From Auanema rhodensis (taxonomy: Eukaryota > Animalia > Nematoda), in contig OZ059894.1 in the NCBI GenBank assembly GCA_964057225.1, positions 6,882,001 through 6,946,000 on the forward strand: DNA of 64,000 nucleotides. The letters run 5' to 3'. This document shows, one piece after another, positions 1-10,122 of the stretch. A program made the position numbers and the translations under genes. Numbering within the stretch: the stretch's first letter is position 1; each line of letters begins with the position of its first letter. The notes below the pieces were generated by a model that was not told where the DNA came from, made no database searches, and was given only the letters and a program-made list of their open reading frames with translations.

Positions 1-2835
1 AAATTCAGTTATTTGTGGAACCATATTAGTCCAAAAGAATCGTCGTCGAATCGCATCAGTAGTTTTATTTATACCTAGGTGTGCACCAATTTTGGAATCT
101 TCGTGAAAAAATTTGATGACAACATCAGTTATTTTGTCGTTTCGCGGCAAAATAATAGATGGTTTTAAATAATTTTTCACTTGTTTTGCATGTAATATGC
201 CTTCTCGTTCTTCATACCGGTCTGATATATTAGCCGGACAGTTATCATTATTAATTTGAGAAAGTGCTTCGCGAATCCAGGGAACTCCAGCTTGAACTTT
301 CCGTATTTCTTCACAATTTAGTTGGTCAATAGAAGAAATAGTTGTAATATGAGCAATAAAAGCATCAACAGGTTTTACTTTGTCCTTTGGTTTAGTAGGA
401 CGACTGTCATTTGCTTCGTTTCCTATATACCTGGAGAGAGCATCACAGACACTGTTTAATTTGCCAGGACGATATTCAATCTTTATGTTGAAATCTTGTA
501 TCATTAGTTGATACTTGGCTAATCTACCTATGAGATCTTTACGCGACATTAAACTGGTTAATGGTCGGTGATCTGTGATAACTGTGGTAGGTACTCCTAA
601 TACATAGGTACGGAATTGTTGAAGAGCAAAGACTAAACCGAGTGCTTCAACTTCAATAGGAGGATATTTCCGTTCCGCTGGAGTCAACTTTCTACTAGCG
701 AACGCAATCGGGTGTAATGGAGAATTTTTCTCTGCTGATTGCAATAAAACTGCTCCCACAGCGATCATACTGCCATCACTTTCTATAACAAAAGGTTGGT
801 CTGCTTTAGGAGGTTTCAGTACAGGGGCAGTACACAGTAATGTTTTTAAAGTTTTAAATGCGTCTGCATGTTCCGATTTCCACTCAAAAGGAGTATCCTT
901 ATGTGTTAACTTATACAATGGCTCAGCTATTCCGGCATAATTTTGAATAAACCGTCGAAAATAGTTAGTCATACCTAGAAAGGATCTGACAGCCGTAACT
1001 GTGCTTGGATTTGGAAATTCGGAAACAGCCTGTATTTTAGCAGGATCTGGTTTAACACCATTTCTACCTATTATAAAACCCAAAAACTTTACTTCAGTGG
1101 CTGCAAAACAACATTTAGATAACTTAATTTTTAACCCTAGTTCAGTGACCTTTTTCAGCACTTCTTGTATATCTCTTAAATGTTCATCAGCTGAGTTCGA
1201 AATTATTAGCAAATCATCTAGATATACAAACAGTTTGCATCTAACAAGAGATTGCAAGTATCGTACTGCGGATTGAAAAGTGTGTGGCGCTCCACACAAT
1301 CCCATAGGCATTCGGCAATACTGATAGGTACCTGATGGAGTGGTAAAAGCAGTTAGGTGTCTATCTGAGCGTTTCAACGGTATTTGGAAGAAACCAGAAA
1401 TGAGATCAAAATTCGAAAAGAACTGAGCTCCAGCCGCTAAGTCTATGATATCAGGAATGTGTGGGATGCTGTATGTTTGTTTCTTAGTAACACTATTCAA
1501 TGCTCTAAAGTCAGTTACGAACCGGAAAGAATTATCTTTCTTTTTCACAAGAACAACTGGACTAGTGAAAGTAGCCGTCGAATTTTCGATTATACCTTGC
1601 GACAACATTTCTTTCACTTGCCGTTCTACTTCTTCTTGCTTACCCAATGGTACTCTGTAAGATCTACTTTTTGGGAAATCCATATCGGATCTTATAGGAA
1701 TGGCATGTTCTACTGGTCCGCAAAAGAGACCAATATTATGATCATGGTTGAAAAATGCCGTTTGGTTTTCCTTAATGATTGTGATCAGATTTTTCTTCAT
1801 TTTATGGGACAGAGTGCAAGAATTGAAGTTCAAATCATCCAAAAGATGCTGAGGAAAAGTTGGTAACTTATCTTCCCAATCAGCTTCAGGTGGAACATAA
1901 TCGTTCATAATTTCTTTAGATGCTATAAGTCCTGAACCAATGTGGTCATTTTTATTAATTTTAATTGGCTTTGAAGAATTGTTTGATACTACCATAGTAA
2001 TAGGAAAAGGTCCTATGGCGGCATCTGGAATTGAGATAGGACCTATGCTAGATTTTAAAAGAGCATATTGATCAAAATCTAATTCTGGTCCTGTTTGCAA
2101 AGATATGTGGGAGGTACTATGTGGTGGAACTGTTACTGTGGACAAACTTATGATATTTACTGTTTTAGTTGTGGTTTTATATGCAAAACAACCAGGTTTT
2201 ACTAAGGGTGTTTCCATATTACCAACAATCAACTTTCCTTTACATAGTTTTAATGTAGTAAATATCTCTCTTTCTTCCAACGTACGCATAAAATCAGTAC
2301 CAAGTAACATTTGTCCTGGACAGTCATTGTCTTCAGATATTAAAAATTCGTGTTCCACTTGGTAACCTGCTATACCCACATCTAACTTGCATTTTCCCAC
2401 AAAGCGAAACTCTGATCCATTTGCAGTGGATGCAGATTTAGAATATTTTGTAAAATATTGTCTTCCAATATATGCCAATGTGGAGAACGGAATATATGAG
2501 ACCGTAGCTCCAGAATCCCATAATGCTAACAGTCCTCTACCTTCAATGTCAATATGAACAAACGGTAACATGTGTCCATTTTTCTTTGTTGTTGTGTGAC
2601 ATACAAAAGGTATGGCTAAAGGAATGTAAGTTATTATGGTGGGAAAATAGCTCCGCATCAATTCATCACTAACTGTTTCATGAATCTCATCTCCCTCAAG
2701 TGGTGGAGCTGTTGGGCTCAACATGATATGGTTTATTTTTAACATAGAAGTAGGGGAGAGATAACATTTTATAGTGAAATATAATGCTATCATTAGACAT
2801 AATATCAGAGTTATACAACCGATGGTAATGAGTGT
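1..2835 (-). CDS. pol: Pol polyprotein frame (TM remnant, aspartic protease, reverse transcriptase, RNase H, start of integrase); 3'-partial
   Basis: Manual translation gives ALWDSGATVSYI (protease, ~2500-2530), SPVVLVKKKDNSFRFVTDFRALN and FVYLDDLLII (RT), ESDGSMIAVGAVLLQ / EVEALGLVFAL / TDHRPL / CDALSR (RNase H), and HEDSKIGAHLGINKT...FFW (integrase zinc-binding start). It is missing from the ORF track because it runs off the window. Confidence 0.95.
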
Positions 2836-3035
2836 TCATTCAATTGAACCTATACAAAAGTCAATGAACAGATCCCAATTGGAGAAAACAATTTTCCTGG
2901 CATCTCTTATAAGTTTACTTCCTTTGAAGATAAAAGAAGAAATTTGAGGCCAATCATGTGAACGAGAAATTACGCGGAGAAGATTATGGTGAGGTGAAGT
3001 AGATAAACTATAACCATAAGTTAATCCAATAGAAG

Positions 3036-3614
3036 TTAATCCAACGTTTTCAACATTGGTTCCCGCTCGGGATCCATTGGTGACATTATGGTGCTTGCCA
3101 TTCTCTCTAATTCCATACTAAAATCAAGAACAGATTTATCTCCTTGTTGTACTCGATGAATAAGCGCTATGGTGAAATTTTTATCTGTTTTAGGCGCTAA
3201 AAGCTCAGTGAGCTGATCCATCAAAACAATCCATGGGCCATTAGTTTTTATGCCACTAGGAATACTATTATACAAGGAGAGAGCTGTTTCATTTGATTCC
3301 AAAAGAAGAGGCAAAATTAATAGTCTCTCAGGTAAGCTTAGATTCATAACATTAAAAAATCTATTTAAAGATTCAACAAAAGAACGAAAGCTACGAGAGC
3401 CGTCATACCTGGGACAGAGATGGCAATTTAAAATAGTTGCCATATTTCTAGAGGGTGGAGCAACATTAGAATTAGGAGATGGAGAGGTAGGAGTCATTTT
3501 TCTTTCAAAAGCTTTAGTTATAGCAGCGGCCCACCGACTTGGTGATCTATTTCGTACTGTAGTAGGTGCCCGAGGTGTTTCCTCAGTGATGGCCTTTCTG
3601 CTTTTACTTCTCAT
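3036..3614 (-). CDS. gag: Gag capsid-like protein, C-terminally truncated
   Basis: PRYDGSRSFRSFVESL and QQGDKSVLDFSMELERMA (resembles the major homology region). It stops shortly afterwards with no zinc knuckle. First ATG is at 3614. Confidence 0.8.
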   Translation of the reverse strand: MRSKSRKAITEETPRAPTTVRNRSPSRWAAAITKAFERKMTPTSPSPNSNVAPPSRNMATILNCHLCPRYDGSRSFRSFVESLNRFFNVMNLSLPERLLILPLLLESNETALSLYNSIPSGIKTNGPWIVLMDQLTELLAPKTDKNFTIALIHRVQQGDKSVLDFSMELERMASTIMSPMDPEREPMLKTLD

Positions 3615-4810
3615 TCTAATTGTTAGAGAAGAAGAGTGAGAAGAAGAAGAGGAATCACCTTCTTCTCTCAAAAATTCAAAAGGAGAGAGGTAGGTGGATG
3701 GAGTATTTAAGTTTTTAGAATTAAATTCAAAAACTTGGCGTACCTCTGGTGATCCTTGTTCCTGATCTTTGTTTTCCTCGCTGATGTCCGAGTCCGACAG
3801 GGTGGCTGGTGAATACAGTTAGATGAATATAAGAGCGCGTACTGGAAGCAACTAGACTCCAGTAAAAACGTTTGTGACAATGGCGTCTGATGAAGGAGGA
3901 TCGTTGAAGCTTCAAGCTCCGCCTCCAGCCATGTGTCACGACACCAGATGTTAGCGCTTATGGTAAACAACCATTGACCGTCTGTCGTGATATTTGAATA
4001 TTATAATCACTTATGTCAGCTTAGAGACAAATAAGGAATCACAGATGGTGCCTTAAGCCTGTTTGAAAACTTTTGAATTTTAACAGCTGTTATTGACTAC
4101 ACATATCGAACAGCTGGTACGCGTGGGCCAACTATTTGAATGTGAGTAAGCTTAAAGTAAACAAAAATGTCTCATCTCGTATATTAAGTTCAATTTTATA
4201 AAGTTTATTAAGATTTGTAGAAAGAATTTCAAAATAAATCTTAATTAAGATAATTTTTAATTTAATTTCAAAAGATTTAGAAGGTAATTTAAGATTGATA
4301 TAGGAATTTAAATTCAGTAATCTGTCAATAATATAGGAAAGAGGAAACGTTGGCAGACGTAGAGTGGACTTGGGTGGGTAGGAATTTAAATATTCTTATT
4401 ATCTCTGAACTAATAAGAAAAGAGTTAACAGGAGTAGAACCCTGATGAACCCTTGGATGTGAATCAAAATCAAAAATCGTAAATAAAATTATCCCAACAG
4501 CCTCCAGCTTCCAAACAACTCAGCTAAAAAGTGAGCTCTGTTGCCACACTGGACATTCACATCATAAAGTAATGAATCAAAATAGCACGCGCGTGCATAA
4601 CAAAAAGGTAACGCTCGTCAAAACTATTGTCTGATAGTTTCCCCAAACGTCTCAGACACCTCCCAGTTTTTGTTGAGCGGAGGAGAAGTGGTAGCCAAAA
4701 TAATTTTTGGGGAAATCATGGTGCACGGCTCGGTTACTCCTCACTGTTGGGTAATTAAGTCCAAAAGTCTCGTAAACTTGCTGTCAATAAATTAACAGTA
4801 GAGTAAGCAA

Positions 4811-4823
4811 GGTGGAACCTCCA
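4811..4823 (-). promoter_or_regulatory. Primer-binding site of element A, complementary to the tRNA-Gln 3' end
   Basis: Minus strand reads TGGAGGTTCCACC immediately after the LTR end, matching the eukaryotic tRNA-Gln 3' end ...GGTGGAACCT-CCA. Confidence 0.88.
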
Positions 4824-5204
4824 CGTTACATATCGTTTCTTCCCGTCTTTTCATGGTCGGAAGATATATGTACTTCTACCTTGTTCCTTAGGTAGGCAGA
4901 CCCGAACGCCCCGATTTCCTTATTAAGACAAATACTCAAAGAGAAAAGGATTCATTATCAGATAACAAGAAAATACAATATAAGAATTACATTAAGAAGG
5001 AATATAAAGAGATATAATAAAGTATTAAATAGAGTATATATATAGATGATATAGAGATGAGACTCACATGACTATAAGACAACCTATCTGGGTTAGACCA
5101 GAAGCAAGAGTGTCATGTGTGTCCCATGTTGTAGGCGGGGCTTGTTCAGGCTCCCGCTATTTGGATGGCGCGCACATGTTTACCATGTGCTTGCAGATGT
5201 GACA
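4824..5204 (-). repeat. 5' LTR of element A (381 bp, TGTCACAT...ATGTAACG)
   Basis: Bounded by the PBS on one side and the interrupted tRNA on the other. It has imperfect terminal inverted repeats and an AATAAA on the element strand near 4920-4925. The partner LTR lies outside the window. Confidence 0.85.
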
Positions 5205-5237
5205 GACCCACGCTCTAACCGACTGAGCTATGGCGGC
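5205..5237 (-). pseudogene. 5' half of a tRNA-Ile(AAT) gene, interrupted at the anticodon loop by element A
   Basis: Identical to the first 33 nt of the intact copies (GCCGCCATAGCTCAGTCGGTTAGAGCGTGGGTC). Its upstream flank matches the array spacer at 9598-9634. Confidence 0.93.
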
Positions 5238-5274
5238 CACGAATCTGGCATTTCGCTATCAAACTTTGTTATAA

Positions 5275-5687
5275 TGTTCCATACGTGTCCTATAAGTAGA
5301 GCGATTGACAACGTCAATCGCTTATAAAACGGAACATTATAAAAACAAATAGCTGACGCTACATTTGAGAAACAGGAATTCAATGCAACAATGAACGAAC
5401 ACTTTTTCATATTAAGTTTAATTAAAGAAAGCCCAATTCAAGCGGAACCAAGTTCCGCGGACCTGATATAACCACTTTTTATGCTCGTAAGGAATACTAT
5501 ATAAGGTTTCCTTACGAATCCTTTGGGCTGCGACTAGGAATCATTATGTAACTTTTATTATTGTAATTTGTATACTTTATCATGAATAAACCTTTCTCTC
5601 TATACTCTTTATCATTTATATTTGGAAGAAAAGAAAGTAATTCCATGTGGTTACCCAGCCGGAACCCTGGGGAACCACCATGGAACG
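5275..5687 (+). repeat. 5' LTR of element B (TGTTCCAT...ATGGAACG)
   Basis: Identical by eye to 9057-9469. Contains TATATAA (~5498) and AATAAA (~5585). Confidence 0.96.
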
Positions 5688-5708
5688 TGGAGGTTCCGCC
5701 GAGATTCG
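5688..5708 (+). promoter_or_regulatory. Primer-binding site of element B, complementary to the tRNA-Gln 3' end
   Basis: TGGAGGTTCCGCCGAGATTCG directly follows the LTR. It pairs with tRNA-Gln ...AATCTCGGTGGAACCT-CCA with one G:U. Confidence 0.9.
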
Positions 5709-6309
5709 TCTATAACCGACGAATCTCTAAGAACCATATTTCGCTACATAAATTTAATTTTGTTGTCTTTCATACATCTAATTAAAGAATTATATTTCGA
5801 TTATGCTATATGAATTTAATTTGAAATCTTTCTCTTCTTTATTTCATTCATTCAAAGAACTTTATTTTGATTTTGATTCATAAATTAATACTGAAATCTT
5901 ATATACATTTATTTAAAAAGATATATTTTGAAACAACTTAATTTTGAAATTTTATATTCATTCATTTAAAAGAAACATTTCGATTTTTATCCATATTCTA
6001 AGATCTTTCATTCATTTTTGAGGAAAAACTTTGTTTATAACTATCATAAATTAATTTGAAATTCTTTTATATTTATTCATTTAAAGAAAGGTATTTCGAT
6101 ATTTTTTTTTCTGTCAATCTTTTCTTTTTCTGTTTTTTTTTTTTTTTTAATCAAAATCTATTCTATCTCTCATAAATTTTTGTTATAAGTTTCAAACAAT
6201 TTTTGAATCAAAAATGAATTAATTTCTTTCATGAATCATCACAAAATTCATTGTTTTATATATATTAAAATTCATTAATTTCTATTCTATCCTTTAAAAT
6301 GTATTACTC

Positions 6310-6312
<3 letters not shown>

Positions 6313-6361
<49 letters not shown>
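6313..6361. repeat. (TA)n microsatellite inside element B
   Basis: About 24 perfect TA units. Confidence 0.95.
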
Positions 6362-6365
<4 letters not shown>

Positions 6366-7145
6366 GTACAAAACTATTCTATACTAGTACTATATTCCTA
6401 CTATATTCCTACTATATTCCTATTTTATTTTTCTTTTATCTTCTTTTAAATTTTATCTTTTTCCCTCTCTTATTACTATTATTTTTTCTCTTCTTCCTAA
6501 TATAACCCAGAAAACAGTCAAATAATTTTGAATTTTTTTTTTTTATCTGAATCCCGAAACTAAGATTTATAATTTTGCATTTTGATCCTAAAAGTAGCCC
6601 GTGAGAAGCAATACCAGACTGTCTCGAGAACTGAGCGGAGGCAACCACTATTTTTGATATAAGACGTACGCATTCCTGATTTTGAAGATCCCTTTTTGGT
6701 CCTATTTTTGCAAATTTGAAAATTACGACAGAATTAGTCGAGAATGAAAGTGTTAGAGTGGTCTCACCATGAAAATCAGGGGAGCAGAATTTCGTTAAGG
6801 GAGCGATTTCTGTGATTTTTCATAGGCAAGAGAAGTCTGGGAAAGTGAATGTACGAGGCCTGAGCACCTAATCTTGTCGAAAGACTGAAAGGGAATACTG
6901 CTTAGATCACCGTCGTATATTTCACGCCTATTCGAGAGATGGGAACTTGATCCTAGAAAGGGCGCACCGGTCACAGGCCCGTGTATGTACCCGATTGAGC
7001 AATTCTCCGTTAGAAGATTCGCTGCAGGCTGGCCCCCTAGCAAGCGTCACGCATACAACCCCATATTGCCTCTCACGTTGTATATATATTTTTATAAGTT
7101 TCGCATCGTTGGTATAATAATTTCCTTTCCAGGAAAACCAACAAG

Positions 7146-7882
7146 ATGACGGACTCGAAGAGTAAAAATCCTCCGCAGGATAAAACAAATCCACAGAGCG
7201 CAGCCCCCGGTAATGATACGCACGTCGAGCCAGTACTCGAGCGGAATCAAAGAAAAAGAGGACCTCCAAATGTTTATGAGCCGGACACGAAGCGCCGACC
7301 TACTGCTGCAAAGAAACCACCCGCTATACCGGGTACCCCCGCGAAAAAAATAGGCACAACAGCTATCAAAACTTCTCGCCACGCTATTACTCTTAGTAAA
7401 ATTAAAACGTCTATTAACAAACAAACTCCTAAACGCAATTCTAACGTTATCAAAAGCTCTAGCTATGTTAGCACACATACTTCCCCTTGTAAAGATTATT
7501 CTCAAATATCATTTTCATACCCAAATACTGCTATTCTTTCTTCTCCTCTTCCTCGAAATTCACCAAACTATCAGAGAAAATAGAAGAAAACGCAAGAAAA
7601 GAATTGTATGAGGAACGGAAGAAAGAGCCACCCACAATTAAGAAATGGAGTTCAGCACTTAAATTGGCATTGGGATTAGAAGATAATTCTCCTACAACGC
7701 CAGCAAAGCCTTATCATGTGCCGATAAGGTATCACAGCACCATACCAGTAACAGAGCCGAAGAAGAGAGTTTCGAAGAGTCAGATCCCGGACCCAAACTT
7801 CGTGGCACCAACAGTACCAGTCATCCATAAGAAAAGACCGTCAACAGTTATTGGGACTACAAGTAAGAAGCTAGAACAATAG
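7146..7882 (+). CDS. Element B ORF1: basic Lys/Arg/Pro-rich protein, apparently split by a frameshift (7146-7583 plus an overlapping frame to 7882)
   Basis: ATG lies 13 nt after a TTTCCAG acceptor. The second frame is already open before the first stops (TKLSEKIEENARKELYEERKK), and both halves have similar composition. Confidence 0.55.
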
Positions 7883-8251
7883 TAAAAATCCATAATTTCT
7901 ATATAAAAATCACAAAAAGTATAATACCATTTTCATAATTTTCATAATTTCCATCTAAACTTGAACCTATATATATTTTTTTTTCTCATTTAAGTAAGAC
8001 ATAAAATTCTACACAAATTATTGTACATTTTTATTTTTCACTCTCATAAAAATATTGTATTAATAACCAAAATTTCAAAATAAAATTATACATCATACTT
8101 GGAATCTTTCAAAAATCACTGCAAAGTTTTAATCAACAATCTTCATCACTTTTTCACCTAACTGGTCAAAAAGGAAGCGACAAAAAGGAAGGAACAGACC
8201 GACCTAGTTTTAAAAAGGATAAAAGGACAGAAAACAGTAACAAAGCTAACA

Positions 8252-8854
8252 ATGTCCACCCAACTTCCTGAAGCCGTCGAAATTCCCCTCATGATGGCCA
8301 AAAAGAGATGGCTTTCAATTCAACTATTACTAAGAGAATTGAAGCAGCTAGGCGCCAATACCATCGCCAACCGCCCCAGGAAAGAGAAGATCCTGAAAGA
8401 GTTAGTTCAAGGACTAACAAGAGCGAACACCAGTACTGAAACGCTCAAAATCTTATGTTACCAATACGACAAGGATCAACTGTCGGAGGTTGACCACTGC
8501 ATAGGACCATGGACCAACATAGCAGGAGTCATCCGAGAAGCCATTGCTGAACTAAGGGACCAACTAGGTTATTCACCTAGTTGCGCTTCACCAGAACAGC
8601 AGACACCAAACTGGATTATTGCCGAGACCCATTCGGCCTATCAAGAATGGAGCCTGCAACATTGCAGCGAACTGCCATCCACAGAGGCAAGAAAAAGCAT
8701 TATAAATGCTCTACAAATATTTCTGGCATCACCAGCAACCACCAAGGAAGAAATGGAAAGAAAAACGGATTTATGCAACAAGACTATGGATCTTCTCCAC
8801 GACCTAGGATCATCACCATTACCAGAGATACACCAGTATTATGAAGAAGACTAA
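8252..8854 (+). CDS. Element B ORF2: 200-aa protein of unknown function, probably helical
   Basis: Intact intronless ATG-to-TAA ORF, GC-richer than its flanks, with amphipathic helical patterning. No family recognised. Confidence 0.7.
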   Translation: MSTQLPEAVEIPLMMAKKRWLSIQLLLRELKQLGANTIANRPRKEKILKELVQGLTRANTSTETLKILCYQYDKDQLSEVDHCIGPWTNIAGVIREAIAELRDQLGYSPSCASPEQQTPNWIIAETHSAYQEWSLQHCSELPSTEARKSIINALQIFLASPATTKEEMERKTDLCNKTMDLLHDLGSSPLPEIHQYYEED

Positions 8855-9056
8855 AAAGAACTTTTGAAAGATTCCCAGTATGATATATGATATATTATTT
8901 TGTAATTACATTGTTTTCCTTTATTTTTTCTCATAAAATTGTTCTGTATTATAAGTATTCTTTTATTTTTTGAAACATTTCATACAACTTTCACATTTGC
9001 ATGGAATTTCACTTTCTCGATGTAGCTGAGGTCAGCTACTTTTTCGATATTAGGCA

Positions 9057-9469
9057 TGTTCCATACGTGTCCTATAAGTAGAGCGATTGACAACGTCAAT
9101 CGCTTATAAAACGGAACATTATAAAAACAAATAGCTGACGCTACATTTGAGAAACAGGAATTCAATGCAACAATGAACGAACACTTTTTCATATTAAGTT
9201 TAATTAAAGAAAGCCCAATTCAAGCGGAACCAAGTTCCGCGGACCTGATATAACCACTTTTTATGCTCGTAAGGAATACTATATAAGGTTTCCTTACGAA
9301 TCCTTTGGGCTGCGACTAGGAATCATTATGTAACTTTTATTATTGTAATTTGTATACTTTATCATGAATAAACCTTTCTCTCTATACTCTTTATCATTTA
9401 TATTTGGAAGAAAAGAAAGTAATTCCATGTGGTTACCCAGCCGGAACCCTGGGGAACCACCATGGAACG
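9057..9469 (+). repeat. 3' LTR of element B
   Basis: Identical by eye to 5275-5687 and followed by the ATAA TSD. Confidence 0.96.
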
Positions 9470-9523
9470 ATAACCTGTGGCAATCAAGTTTTGAATAATT
9501 TAGAAGTTAAAAGAAAAATGTTT

Positions 9524-9597
9524 TGCCGCCAGCAGGGGTCGAACCTGCGACCTTGGGCTTATTAGACCCACGCTCTAACCGACTGAGCTATGGCGGC
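9524..9597 (-). tRNA. tRNA-Ile (anticodon AAT)
   Basis: GCCGCCATAGCTCAGTCGGTTAGAGCGTGGGTCT-AAT-AAGCCCAAGGTCGCAGGTTCGACCCCTGCTGGCGGCA forms a full cloverleaf with A and B boxes and a downstream T-run. Confidence 0.97.
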
Positions 9598-9684
9598 CAC
9601 GAATCTGCCATTTCGCTATCAAACTTTGTTATAACCTGTCGCAATCAAGTTTTGAATAATTTAGAAGTTAAAAATAAAAGGTTT

Positions 9685-9758
9685 TGCCGCCAGCAGGGGT
9701 CGAACCTGCGACCTTGGGCTTATTAGACCCACGCTCTAACCGACTGAGCTATGGCGGC
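9685..9758 (-). tRNA. tRNA-Ile (anticodon AAT), second intact tandem copy
   Basis: Identical to 9524-9597; array period is 161 bp. Confidence 0.97.
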
Positions 9759-9814
9759 TACGGATCTGCTGTTTCGCAAAAATTAATTAGTACACAGATG
9801 TAGTTTGAGGGTTA

Positions 9815-10020
9815 TGTAGCCGCCTTCGGTCGCTTGCTTATTCGGGAGTTCGCCTTCTAGCAACCTCATGGACGGCTTGTAGTTTAGTCTTTATACTTAT
9901 ACTTATCTTATTGTATTATAACTCACTAATTGTATTGTAATGTTGATGTTTCATGTATAATAAACCTTTCTCTAATATCTTATGATTCACCTTATGCTCT
10001 CTATATTCCTTACCGCTACA
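9815..10020 (+). mobile_element. Candidate solo or partial LTR of a third element
   Basis: TGTAGC...GCTACA ends, and an AATAAACCTTTCTCT stretch identical to the poly(A) region of the element B LTR. No TSD found. Confidence 0.4.
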
Positions 10021-10040
10021 CCAAAGAATACTACTTATTA

Positions 10041-10122
10041 TTATTAGAATCACGCTCTAACGGACCCCTGCTGGCGGCAAAATATTTTTGTTTTACCTTC
10101 TATATTGTTCAAAACTTGATTT
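10041..10122. pseudogene. Rearranged tRNA-Ile remnant (two fragments in opposite orientation plus inverted spacer)
   Basis: 10041-10061 matches the minus-strand anticodon/D-arm part (19 of 21 nt). 10063-10079 GACCCCTGCTGGCGGCA is the tRNA 3' end on the plus strand, followed by a diverged inverted copy of the array spacer. Confidence 0.8.

What the first reader, a model, noticed from the sequence alone, without database searches (positions are those of the whole stretch)
4824..10122. A tRNA-Ile tandem array acts as a landing pad for two, possibly three, different LTR retroelements
Seen: removing the insertions restores a regular 161-bp tRNA-Ile array of at least three copies. Element A sits exactly in the anticodon loop of copy 1 (after nt 33). 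Element B sits 34-37 bp upstream of the same tRNA. An LTR-like fragment lies about 57 bp upstream of copy 3. I saw no LTR element in the remaining 54 kb. Known: integration near Pol III genes occurs in yeast Ty1/Ty3 and Dictyostelium TRE/DGLT-A elements. Inference: this may be a nematode gypsy lineage that targets tRNA genes. I do not know of one described, but cannot check the literature.
Basis: partly seen in the sequence, partly recalled or inferred. Interest (0 to 1): 0.85.

Follow-up and report, generated by a model that had tools for sequence, protein, structure and literature searches.

The report
Nematode retrotransposons aimed at tRNA genes
In this nematode genome, young gypsy-type retrotransposons insert almost only into or just upstream of tandemly repeated tRNA and 5S rRNA genes, a habit known from yeasts and social amoebae that I could not find described for an animal.

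Summary
Beyond the window's left edge, element A's other LTR is preceded by the missing tRNA-Ile 3' half and a GACC duplication.

Element A is a Ty3/gypsy element (PR-RT-RNaseH-IN). It splits tRNA-Ile copy 1 at nt 30-33. Element B is a 4.2-kb pol-less LTR element with identical LTRs. It sits 34-37 bp upstream of the same gene, with TSD ATAA. A third, older LTR (family C) borders copy 3 in a rearranged context.

Genome-wide, I sampled the best-scoring LTR copies:
- **Family B:** all 21 independent insertions lie in tRNA or 5S rRNA arrays, and 17 lie 35-97 bp upstream of the gene start. A uniform spread within array units predicts 3.5 (P about 4e-11).
- **Family A:** 18 of 25 insertions lie in tRNA arrays, and 10 fall between -30 and +46 of the gene start.
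- **Targets:** there is no target-sequence consensus. LTR pairs are 99.2-100% identical.

The best reading is integration directed by the RNA polymerase III machinery, as for Ty1, Ty3 and DGLT-A. The tethering partner is inferred, not shown.

The scan had noted the same theme elsewhere in this genome, but those follow-ups lacked genome-wide counts. I found no nematode or animal precedent in the searchable literature.

The parts
1..4810 (-). Element A internal region. The pol frame (PR-RT-RNaseH and the start of the IN zinc finger) occupies 1-2724 and runs off the left edge. The gag/leader region is 2725-4810.
   Evidence: Pfam hits RVT_1, RT_RNaseH, gag-asp_proteas and Integrase_H2C2. The IN core (rve) continues in L002.
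4811..4823 (-). Element A primer-binding site, TGGAGGTTCCACC in the element's sense.
   Evidence: Read directly. The same junction, AACG|TGGAGGTTCCRCC, occurs 313 times in the genome against 0 for the reversed control.
4824..5204 (-). Element A 5' LTR, 381 bp, with termini TGT...AACG.
   Evidence: Its partner LTR at C1:6880052-6880432 is 99.7% identical. At least 42 further copies were found.
5205..5237 (-). The 5' part (nt 1-33) of tRNA-Ile copy 1. Bases 5205-5208 (GACC) are one copy of element A's TSD.
   Evidence: Repeat family D3. The complementary 3' half plus GACC lies at the other LTR.
5238..5274 (-). Upstream spacer of tRNA copy 1. Bases 5271-5274 (ATAA) are one copy of element B's TSD.
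5275..5687 (+). Element B 5' LTR, 413 bp.
   Evidence: 100% identical to 9057-9469.
5688..9056 (+). Element B internal region. The PBS TGGAGGTTCCGCC is at 5688-5700. ORFs lie at 7146-7583, 7604-7882 and 8252-8854. There is no pol.
   Evidence: None of the three ORFs has a Pfam hit. No similarity to the ORF of A's gag region.
9057..9469 (+). Element B 3' LTR, followed by the TSD copy ATAA at 9470-9473.
9524..9597 (-). tRNA-Ile(AAT) copy 2, intact.
   Evidence: ARAGORN; Rfam 71.8 bits.
9685..9758 (-). tRNA-Ile(AAT) copy 3, intact.
9807..10040 (+). LTR of a third family (C). It is diverged, has no TSD, and its ends are uncertain.
   Evidence: Window 9820-10033 matches at least 39 genomic copies at 83-84%, with pairs about 3.2 kb apart. 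There is a short similarity to the R/U5-like part of LTR-B (family D4).
10041..10121 (.). Rearrangement scar. A degenerate antisense tRNA-Ile piece (10041-10065) is fused to an inverted tRNA 3' end plus 59-nt spacer (10063-10121).
   Evidence: Repeat families D5, I1 and I2.

Best explanation
[quoted passage not shown] Members share TGT...AACG LTR ends and the PBS TGGAGGTTCC(A/G)CC.

Family B and its unknown autonomous helper integrate about 35-97 bp upstream of the start of tRNA and 5S rRNA genes. That is just beyond where TFIIIB is expected to sit.

Family A integrates from about 30 bp upstream to about nt 46 inside the tRNA gene, between the A and B boxes. This destroys single units of highly redundant arrays.

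Shown here: the insertions, their TSDs, their positions relative to many unrelated Pol III genes, the lack of a sequence motif, and their youth. Inferred: that the integration complex is tethered to TFIIIB, TFIIIC or Pol III, by analogy with Ty3, Ty1, TRE5-A and DGLT-A.
For:
- LTR-A and LTR-B searches of the whole genome each returned at least 40 copies, and most flanks carry tandem tRNA arrays of many isoacceptors.
- All 23 LTR pairs have perfect 4-bp TSDs.
- Position table. Family B lies at -35, -43, -59, -60, -60, -60, -68, -69, -71, -72, -73, -84 and -85 from tRNA +1. Upstream distance stays constant while unit length ranges from 161 to 1017 bp.
- The four B events without a tRNA are all 55-97 bp upstream of 5S rRNA genes.
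- Statistics. B: 17 of 21 in the window against 3.5 expected if uniform within units, P=3.6e-11. A: 10 of 18 array events in -30..+46 against 4.6 expected, P=0.0045. The A and B windows differ (Fisher 7e-5 and 2e-6).
- Background: about 28,000 tRNA and 8,200 5S first-look candidates in 181 Mb.
- 313 exact LTR-end/PBS junctions against 0 for the control. At least 39 of the 56 listed on C3 lie in the 5S domain at 12.0-13.5 Mb.
- No target consensus, and LTR pairs 99.2-100% identical.
Against: - Family A is less strict. Seven of 25 events have no Pol III gene within 1.5 kb, and eight array events lie outside the window.
- The position windows were chosen after seeing the data.
- Only the best-scoring 40 of 80 (B) and 40 of 164 (A) candidates were examined.
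- The tRNA and 5S counts are rough first-look figures.
- The integrase of A shows no recognisable targeting domain: only rve, with no chromodomain hit.
- B encodes no integrase and its helper was not found.
- No binding or de novo insertion data exist.
Confidence: 0.8

Rival explanations
1. Integration is random. Copies survive only in redundant tRNA and 5S arrays, where they do no harm (retention bias).
For: Arrays are highly redundant, so units split by family A are tolerated. An earlier follow-up on this genome (s1-419004) left this open.
Against: More than 90% of this 181-Mb genome lies outside the arrays, and much of that should be neutral. Even so, 21 of 21 B events are in arrays. Within units the positions are not uniform (P=3.6e-11), which tolerance does not predict for spacer DNA. 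The copies are very young, with LTR pairs 99.2-100% identical.
Confidence: 0.07
2. A few chance insertions were multiplied together with the arrays by unequal crossing-over or segmental duplication.
For: Identical flanks recur: tRNA-Glu event x4, tRNA-Arg-ACG event x4, and Leu, Ala and Lys-CTT events x2 each.
Against: Duplicates were collapsed before counting. The remaining 21 B and 25 A events have different TSDs. The B events lie in arrays of 11 tRNA anticodon types plus 5S rRNA on seven chromosomes.
Confidence: 0.04
3. Targeting is real but indirect. The integration complex prefers open or specially phased chromatin next to active Pol III genes, rather than binding a Pol III factor.
For: The windows are tens of bp wide and lack the bp-precise targeting of Ty3. 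No targeting domain was recognised in the IN of element A.
Against: The distance is constant across tRNA (type 2) and 5S (type 1) promoters and across units of 161-1017 bp. The two families have sharply different windows at the same genes.
Confidence: 0.12
4. The region is misassembled, or the tRNA pieces belong to the elements themselves (Helenus-like LTRs carrying tRNA sequence).
For: Short-read contigs from four public runs do not bridge the junctions.
Against: Complementary tRNA halves with a matching 4-bp duplication flank element A 7.15 kb apart. Element B is flanked by ATAA, and its removal restores the unit. Neither ARAGORN nor Rfam calls a tRNA inside LTR-A or LTR-B. The same LTRs abut many different tRNAs.
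Confidence: 0.01

Closest known systems
Ty3 of Saccharomyces cerevisiae (Ty3/gypsy, Metaviridae)
   Same: Same superfamily and pol domain order. Integrates at Pol III genes, including tRNA and 5S genes, without a target sequence motif. Family A's window is centred near the transcription start.
   Different: Ty3 integrates within a few bp of the start site through TFIIIB (bioRxiv 10.1101/2021.07.27.453949; PMC6673722). Family A spreads from -30 to +46 and often lands inside the gene. TSDs are 4 bp and the LTR ends are TG...CG. The host is an animal with a 181-Mb genome. Any shared mechanism is untested.
Ty1 of S. cerevisiae (Ty1/copia)
   Same: Integrates upstream of Pol III genes in a window rather than at a point, in either orientation. 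Family B behaves similarly.
   Different: Ty1 belongs to a different superfamily. It uses a C-terminal integrase motif that binds Pol III subunits AC40/AC19 (PMC7459421, PMC10050235). From my own knowledge, its window reaches several hundred bp with nucleosomal periodicity. Family B is confined to about -35..-97 and has no integrase of its own.
Dictyostelid DGLT-A (Ty3/gypsy) and TRE5-A (non-LTR)
   Same: Position-specific, orientation-tolerant integration tens of bp upstream of tRNA genes. This was interpreted as convergent evolution of safe-site targeting (PMC5006619, PMC6101501).
   Different: The hosts are amoebae with compact genomes and dispersed tRNA genes. Here the host is a nematode with very large tandem arrays. 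The window positions differ, and 5S rRNA genes are also used.
Dada DNA transposons of animals
   Same: Animal mobile elements that live in multicopy small-RNA genes such as tRNA and snRNA genes (PMC3706591, PMC8869645).
   Different: Dada are DNA transposons that insert at a fixed sequence inside the target gene. The elements here are LTR retrotransposons with variable TSD sequence and position-defined, not sequence-defined, targets.
Unnamed Ty3/gypsy polyproteins of rhabditid nematodes (Auanema sp. JU1783, C. brenneri CAEBREN_00607, Heterorhabditis bacteriophora)
   Same: Nearest pol relatives, 49-54% identical over most of PR-RT-RNaseH.
   Different: The one C. brenneri copy examined has other LTR ends and a different PBS. 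No tRNA gene was called within 23 kb, so the targeting habit is not evident in that relative.

Membership tests
Ty3/gypsy (Metaviridae) LTR retrotransposon: element A | Two LTRs in direct orientation flanked by a short target-site duplication | tested here: met
   The LTRs are 7.15 kb apart and 99.7% identical, with TSD GACC. All 11 A pairs found genome-wide have 4-bp TSDs.
Ty3/gypsy (Metaviridae) LTR retrotransposon: element A | pol domain order PR-RT-RNaseH-IN | tested here: met
   Pfam order along the frame is Asp_protease, RVT_1, RT_RNaseH, Integrase_H2C2. The rve core follows in L002.
Ty3/gypsy (Metaviridae) LTR retrotransposon: element A | PBS next to the 5' LTR, complementary to the 3' end of a host tRNA | tested here: inconclusive
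   TGGAGGTTCCACC directly follows the LTR and recurs 313 times in that context. Its assignment to tRNA-Gln rests on my general knowledge of eukaryotic tRNA-Gln and on earlier scan notes. No tRNA-Gln gene of this genome was read.
Ty3/gypsy (Metaviridae) LTR retrotransposon: element A | Canonical TG...CA LTR termini | tested here: not met
   Both families end ...AACG (TG...CG). The final G is not target-derived, as element B's flanks show.
Pol III-gene-directed retrotransposons (functional class: Ty1, Ty3, DGLT-A, TRE5-A) | Insertions at a constrained distance from the gene start, whatever the tRNA identity | tested here: met
   B: 13 tRNA events at -35..-85 across Ile, Asn, Pro (x2 anticodons), Ala, Arg (x2 anticodons), Gly and Asp. 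A: 10 events at -30..+46 across Ile, Lys, His, Glu, Ala, Leu and Ile-TAT.
Pol III-gene-directed retrotransposons (functional class: Ty1, Ty3, DGLT-A, TRE5-A) | Other classes of Pol III genes are hit in the same way | tested here: met
   Four B events lie 55-97 bp upstream of 5S rRNA genes. Junctions of this element group are concentrated in the 5S domain of C3. Not seen for family A.
Pol III-gene-directed retrotransposons (functional class: Ty1, Ty3, DGLT-A, TRE5-A) | No conserved target sequence | tested here: met
   Aligned target sites of 12 A and 12 B events show no consensus.
Pol III-gene-directed retrotransposons (functional class: Ty1, Ty3, DGLT-A, TRE5-A) | Targeting depends on bound TFIIIB, TFIIIC or Pol III | not testable with these tools
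   This needs binding or genetic experiments.
Ty3 sensu stricto | Integration within a few bp of the Pol III start site | tested here: not met
   Family A positions are -30, -24, -15, -6, +22, +26, +28, +31, +37 and +46. Family B has none closer than -35.
Non-autonomous LTR element (LARD-like): element B | LTRs, PBS and TSD present, with no reverse transcriptase or integrase | tested here: met
   The element is 4195 bp. Its three ORFs have no Pfam hit. Copies are 4.15-4.2 kb genome-wide, and the longer B pairs are nested insertions.
Helenus-type LTR elements (tRNA-like sequence inside the LTR) | The tRNA-derived sequence is part of the LTR | tested here: not met
   The tRNA pieces lie outside the LTRs, beyond the TSDs. 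No tRNA is called inside LTR-A or LTR-B.
Dada-type target-specific transposons | Insertion at one fixed sequence within the small-RNA gene | tested here: not met
   Positions and TSD sequences vary.

The most novel reading that the evidence does not exclude
This may be the first group of animal LTR retrotransposons with RNA polymerase III-directed integration, evolved independently of the yeast and amoeba cases.

It has two distinct site classes at the same genes: inside the tRNA gene between the A and B boxes, and 35-97 bp upstream of tRNA and 5S genes. It lives in a large, non-compact genome whose roughly 28,000 tRNA and 8,000 5S gene copies act as its habitat.

Array expansion and element targeting may have co-evolved. 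This would challenge the idea that such targeting is an adaptation to compact genomes.
Probability: 0.55. Interest if true: 0.8.

Novelty: new variant of a known kind. Interest (0 to 1): 0.72.

Why it matters
Pol III-directed integration is the textbook case of a mobile element choosing a safe site. It is known from budding and fission-type yeasts and from dictyostelid amoebae, and has been explained as an adaptation to compact, gene-dense genomes (PMC5006619, PMC5911963).

A nematode case would show the strategy also arises in animals and in a 181-Mb genome. It would provide two related families with different position rules for mapping the targeting determinant. It would also link retrotransposon biology to the unusual expansion of tRNA and 5S arrays in this species. 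Integrases that target safe sites are of general interest as models for directed integration.

Tried and rejected
- **Control TE family:** a Tc1/mariner (DDE_3) search gave coordinates only, so distances to tRNAs could not be scored. The hits cluster at chromosome centres, unlike the LTR families.
- **Public reads:** four runs were laid on 4300-9000. All are short-read contigs, and none bridges a junction. This neither supports nor contradicts the assembly.
- **Autonomous form of B:** the 11.8-kb and 12.2-kb B pairs proved to be ordinary B elements with nested inserts.
- **B's ORFs:** no Pfam family, and no similarity to the ORF of A's gag region.
- **Integrase of A:** no chromodomain or other extra domain.
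- **Relatives:** the C. brenneri and C. remanei loci have no tRNA gene called nearby.
- **Literature:** searches for nematode or animal tRNA-targeting LTR elements, and for nematode tRNA arrays, found nothing relevant.
- **LTR-C:** the idea that it is a simple solo-LTR insertion was rejected, because its two flanks do not match one site.
Full report
**Anatomy in the window**

ARAGORN and Rfam find two intact tRNA-Ile(AAT) genes on the minus strand, at 9524-9597 and 9685-9758, 161 bp apart. Bases 5205-5274 repeat the first 33 nt of the tRNA plus its upstream spacer at 99% identity.

Left of 5205 lies a 381-bp LTR (4824-5204). It is followed, on the minus strand, by the primer-binding site TGGAGGTTCCACC (4811-4823). 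Next comes a gag/leader region, then an open pol frame with protease, reverse transcriptase, RNase H and the start of the integrase zinc finger. This is element A, a Ty3/gypsy element lying in the same orientation as the tRNA.

Right of 5274 lies element B (5275-9469, plus strand). It has two identical 413-bp LTRs, the PBS TGGAGGTTCCGCC, and three ORFs with no Pfam family. It has no pol. Its 4-bp duplication ATAA (5271-5274 and 9470-9473) lies 34-37 bp upstream of the split tRNA. Removing B restores the array unit exactly.

The window is G000:C1:6882001-6946000. Element A's second LTR lies 1.6-1.9 kb beyond the left edge. It is preceded by ...ccttgggcttattaGACC, which is the missing 3' half of the tRNA, and by a further intact unit. 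GACC recurs at 5205-5208.

Element A is therefore a 7153-bp insertion with a 4-bp duplication of tRNA nt 30-33, at the junction of the anticodon stem and loop. Two complementary gene halves joined by a matching duplication 7 kb apart are hard to obtain by misassembly. Public runs exist only as short-read contigs, and these do not bridge the junctions, so they give no independent check.

**The third LTR**

Window 9820-10033 matches at least 39 other copies at 83-84% identity (224 candidates). These often occur in pairs about 3.2 kb apart. So a third family, C, is present, and this copy is older or from a different subfamily.

On its left, array homology stops 27 bp upstream of tRNA copy 3. On its right lies a degenerate antisense tRNA piece. 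This is fused to an inverted tRNA 3' end and spacer. There is no duplication, so the original site cannot be reconstructed. The arrangement looks like a recombination or inversion scar at the edge of the array.

**Genome-wide test**

I searched the genome with each LTR and examined the 40-odd best-scoring copies of each with 1.5-kb flanks. I then:
- paired LTRs by strand, distance and identical 4-bp duplications;
- collapsed events with identical flanks, which are array duplications;
- rebuilt each empty site;
- located tRNA genes with ARAGORN, partial tRNAs with BLAST, and homologous positions in neighbouring units.

This left 21 independent B events and 25 independent A events.

**Family B**

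Thirteen events lie 35, 43, 59, 60, 60, 60, 68, 69, 71, 72, 73, 84 and 85 bp upstream of the first base of a tRNA gene. The genes are Ile, Asn, Pro-CGG, Pro-AGG, Ala, Arg-TCG, Arg-ACG, Gly and Asp. The unit lengths range from 161 to 1017 bp. The upstream distance is therefore constant while the downstream distance varies.

The four events with no tRNA nearby all sit in 5S rRNA arrays, 55, 67, 87 and 97 bp upstream of a 5S gene. The last four lie elsewhere in tRNA arrays. One of these is about 27 bp upstream of a truncated tRNA-Leu.

If positions were uniform within each unit, 3.5 of 21 events would fall in the -35..-97 window. Seventeen do (P=3.6e-11). Orientation is mixed, with 11 divergent and 6 tandem, which is not significant.

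**Family A**

Eighteen of 25 events are in tRNA arrays. Ten fall between -30 and +46:
- upstream at -6 (Lys), -15 (Ala), -24 and -30 (Glu);
- inside the gene at +22 (Leu), +26 (His), +28 and +31 (Ile), +37 (Glu) and +46 (an intron-containing Ile-TAT-type gene).

All six internal hits lie between the A box and the B box, using the standard positions nt 8-19 and 52-62 from general knowledge. The expectation under uniformity is 4.6 (P=0.0045).

Seven events have no Pol III gene within 1.5 kb by ARAGORN or Rfam, so A is less strict. The A and B windows differ clearly (Fisher 7e-5 and 2e-6).

**Background**

First-look counts give about 28,000 tRNA and 8,200 5S candidates. These figures are rough. 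Assuming units of about 300 bp (tRNA) and 500 bp (5S), the arrays would occupy some 6-7% of 181 Mb. The chance of 21 of 21 B events falling there by random placement is negligible.

An exact search for the shared LTR-end/PBS junction (AACG|TGGAGGTTCCRCC) finds 313 sites, against 0 for the reversed control. The listed sites are strongly clustered. At least 39 of the 56 listed on C3 lie within the 5S domain at 12.0-13.5 Mb.

Target sites show no sequence consensus. LTR pairs are 99.2-100% identical, so the insertions are young.

**Interpretation**

- Co-amplification with the arrays does occur, but it was removed from the counts.
- Sequence-specific targeting is excluded by the variable duplications.

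The pattern is that of Pol III-directed integration: a constant position relative to the start of unrelated tRNA genes and of 5S genes, in either orientation.

I infer tethering of the integration complex to TFIIIB, TFIIIC or Pol III, as shown for Ty3, Ty1 and TRE5-A (PMC5911963, PMC7459421, PMC10050235, PMC6101501). Nothing here shows the contact. Element A's integrase has a zinc finger, a DDE core and a GPY/F-type C-terminus, with no extra recognisable domain. B has no integrase, and its helper was not identified. The long B pairs are B elements carrying nested inserts.

**Relatives and literature**

The pol of A is 49-54% identical to gypsy polyproteins of Auanema, Caenorhabditis brenneri and Heterorhabditis, so the host is a rhabditid-type nematode. 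The one C. brenneri copy inspected has different LTR ends and a different PBS, with no tRNA gene called nearby.

Full-text searches found Pol III targeting described for yeast Ty elements and dictyostelid elements. They also found sequence-specific Dada DNA transposons in animal small-RNA genes. I found no LTR retrotransposon of a nematode or other animal with this habit. The main review does not mention animals. Absence from the held library is not proof of absence.

**Relation to earlier scan notes**

Other readers flagged LTR elements in tRNA-Ala, -Glu, -Pro and -Tyr arrays of this genome, as well as the AACG ends and the tRNA-Gln PBS. Two follow-ups judged single loci insufficient to show targeting. 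The genome-wide counts here supply what those follow-ups lacked.

Noticed in passing
whole genome (G000); e.g. C4:18.56-18.94 Mb and C3:12.0-13.5 Mb: First-look counts suggest about 28,000 tRNA and 8,200 5S rRNA gene copies, arranged in tandem arrays with units of 161-1017 bp. This is an extreme expansion for a nematode.
   Followed up: partly
L051 (G000:C4:15569163-15572580), 2018-3356: A 490-bp tandem unit carries both a 5S rRNA gene and a U4 snRNA gene.
   Followed up: no
G000:C7:9729525-9738399 (L007, L015): A family A copy (8875 bp, TSD GTAT) is nested inside a family B element. B-LTR pairs spanning 11.8 and 12.2 kb are likewise B elements with inserts of about 8 kb.
   Followed up: partly
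genome-wide A copies: Most complete A pairs span 10.13 kb, and the window's copy spans 7.15 kb. The two forms are collinear over the first and last 1.5 kb of internal sequence. Derivatives of 2.6-2.7 kb also exist. The nature of the 3-kb difference was not seen.
   Followed up: partly
L078 about 5447-5515 (C. brenneri GL379805.1): A tRNA-like stretch lies just inside the 5' LTR of the nearest Caenorhabditis relative. ARAGORN does not call it.
   Followed up: no
window 10041-10121: A degenerate antisense tRNA-Ile piece is fused, at a CGAC/GGAC microhomology, to an inverted tRNA 3' end and spacer. This looks like an inversion or recombination scar beside LTR-C.
   Followed up: partly
whole genome, DDE_3 hits: Tc1/mariner-type transposase hits cluster at about 10-12.7 Mb of several chromosomes. 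This distribution differs from that of the LTR families.
   Followed up: no
window 6302-6373 and 6117-6160: A (TA)n microsatellite and long T runs lie inside element B's leader. Short-read contigs break there.
   Followed up: no
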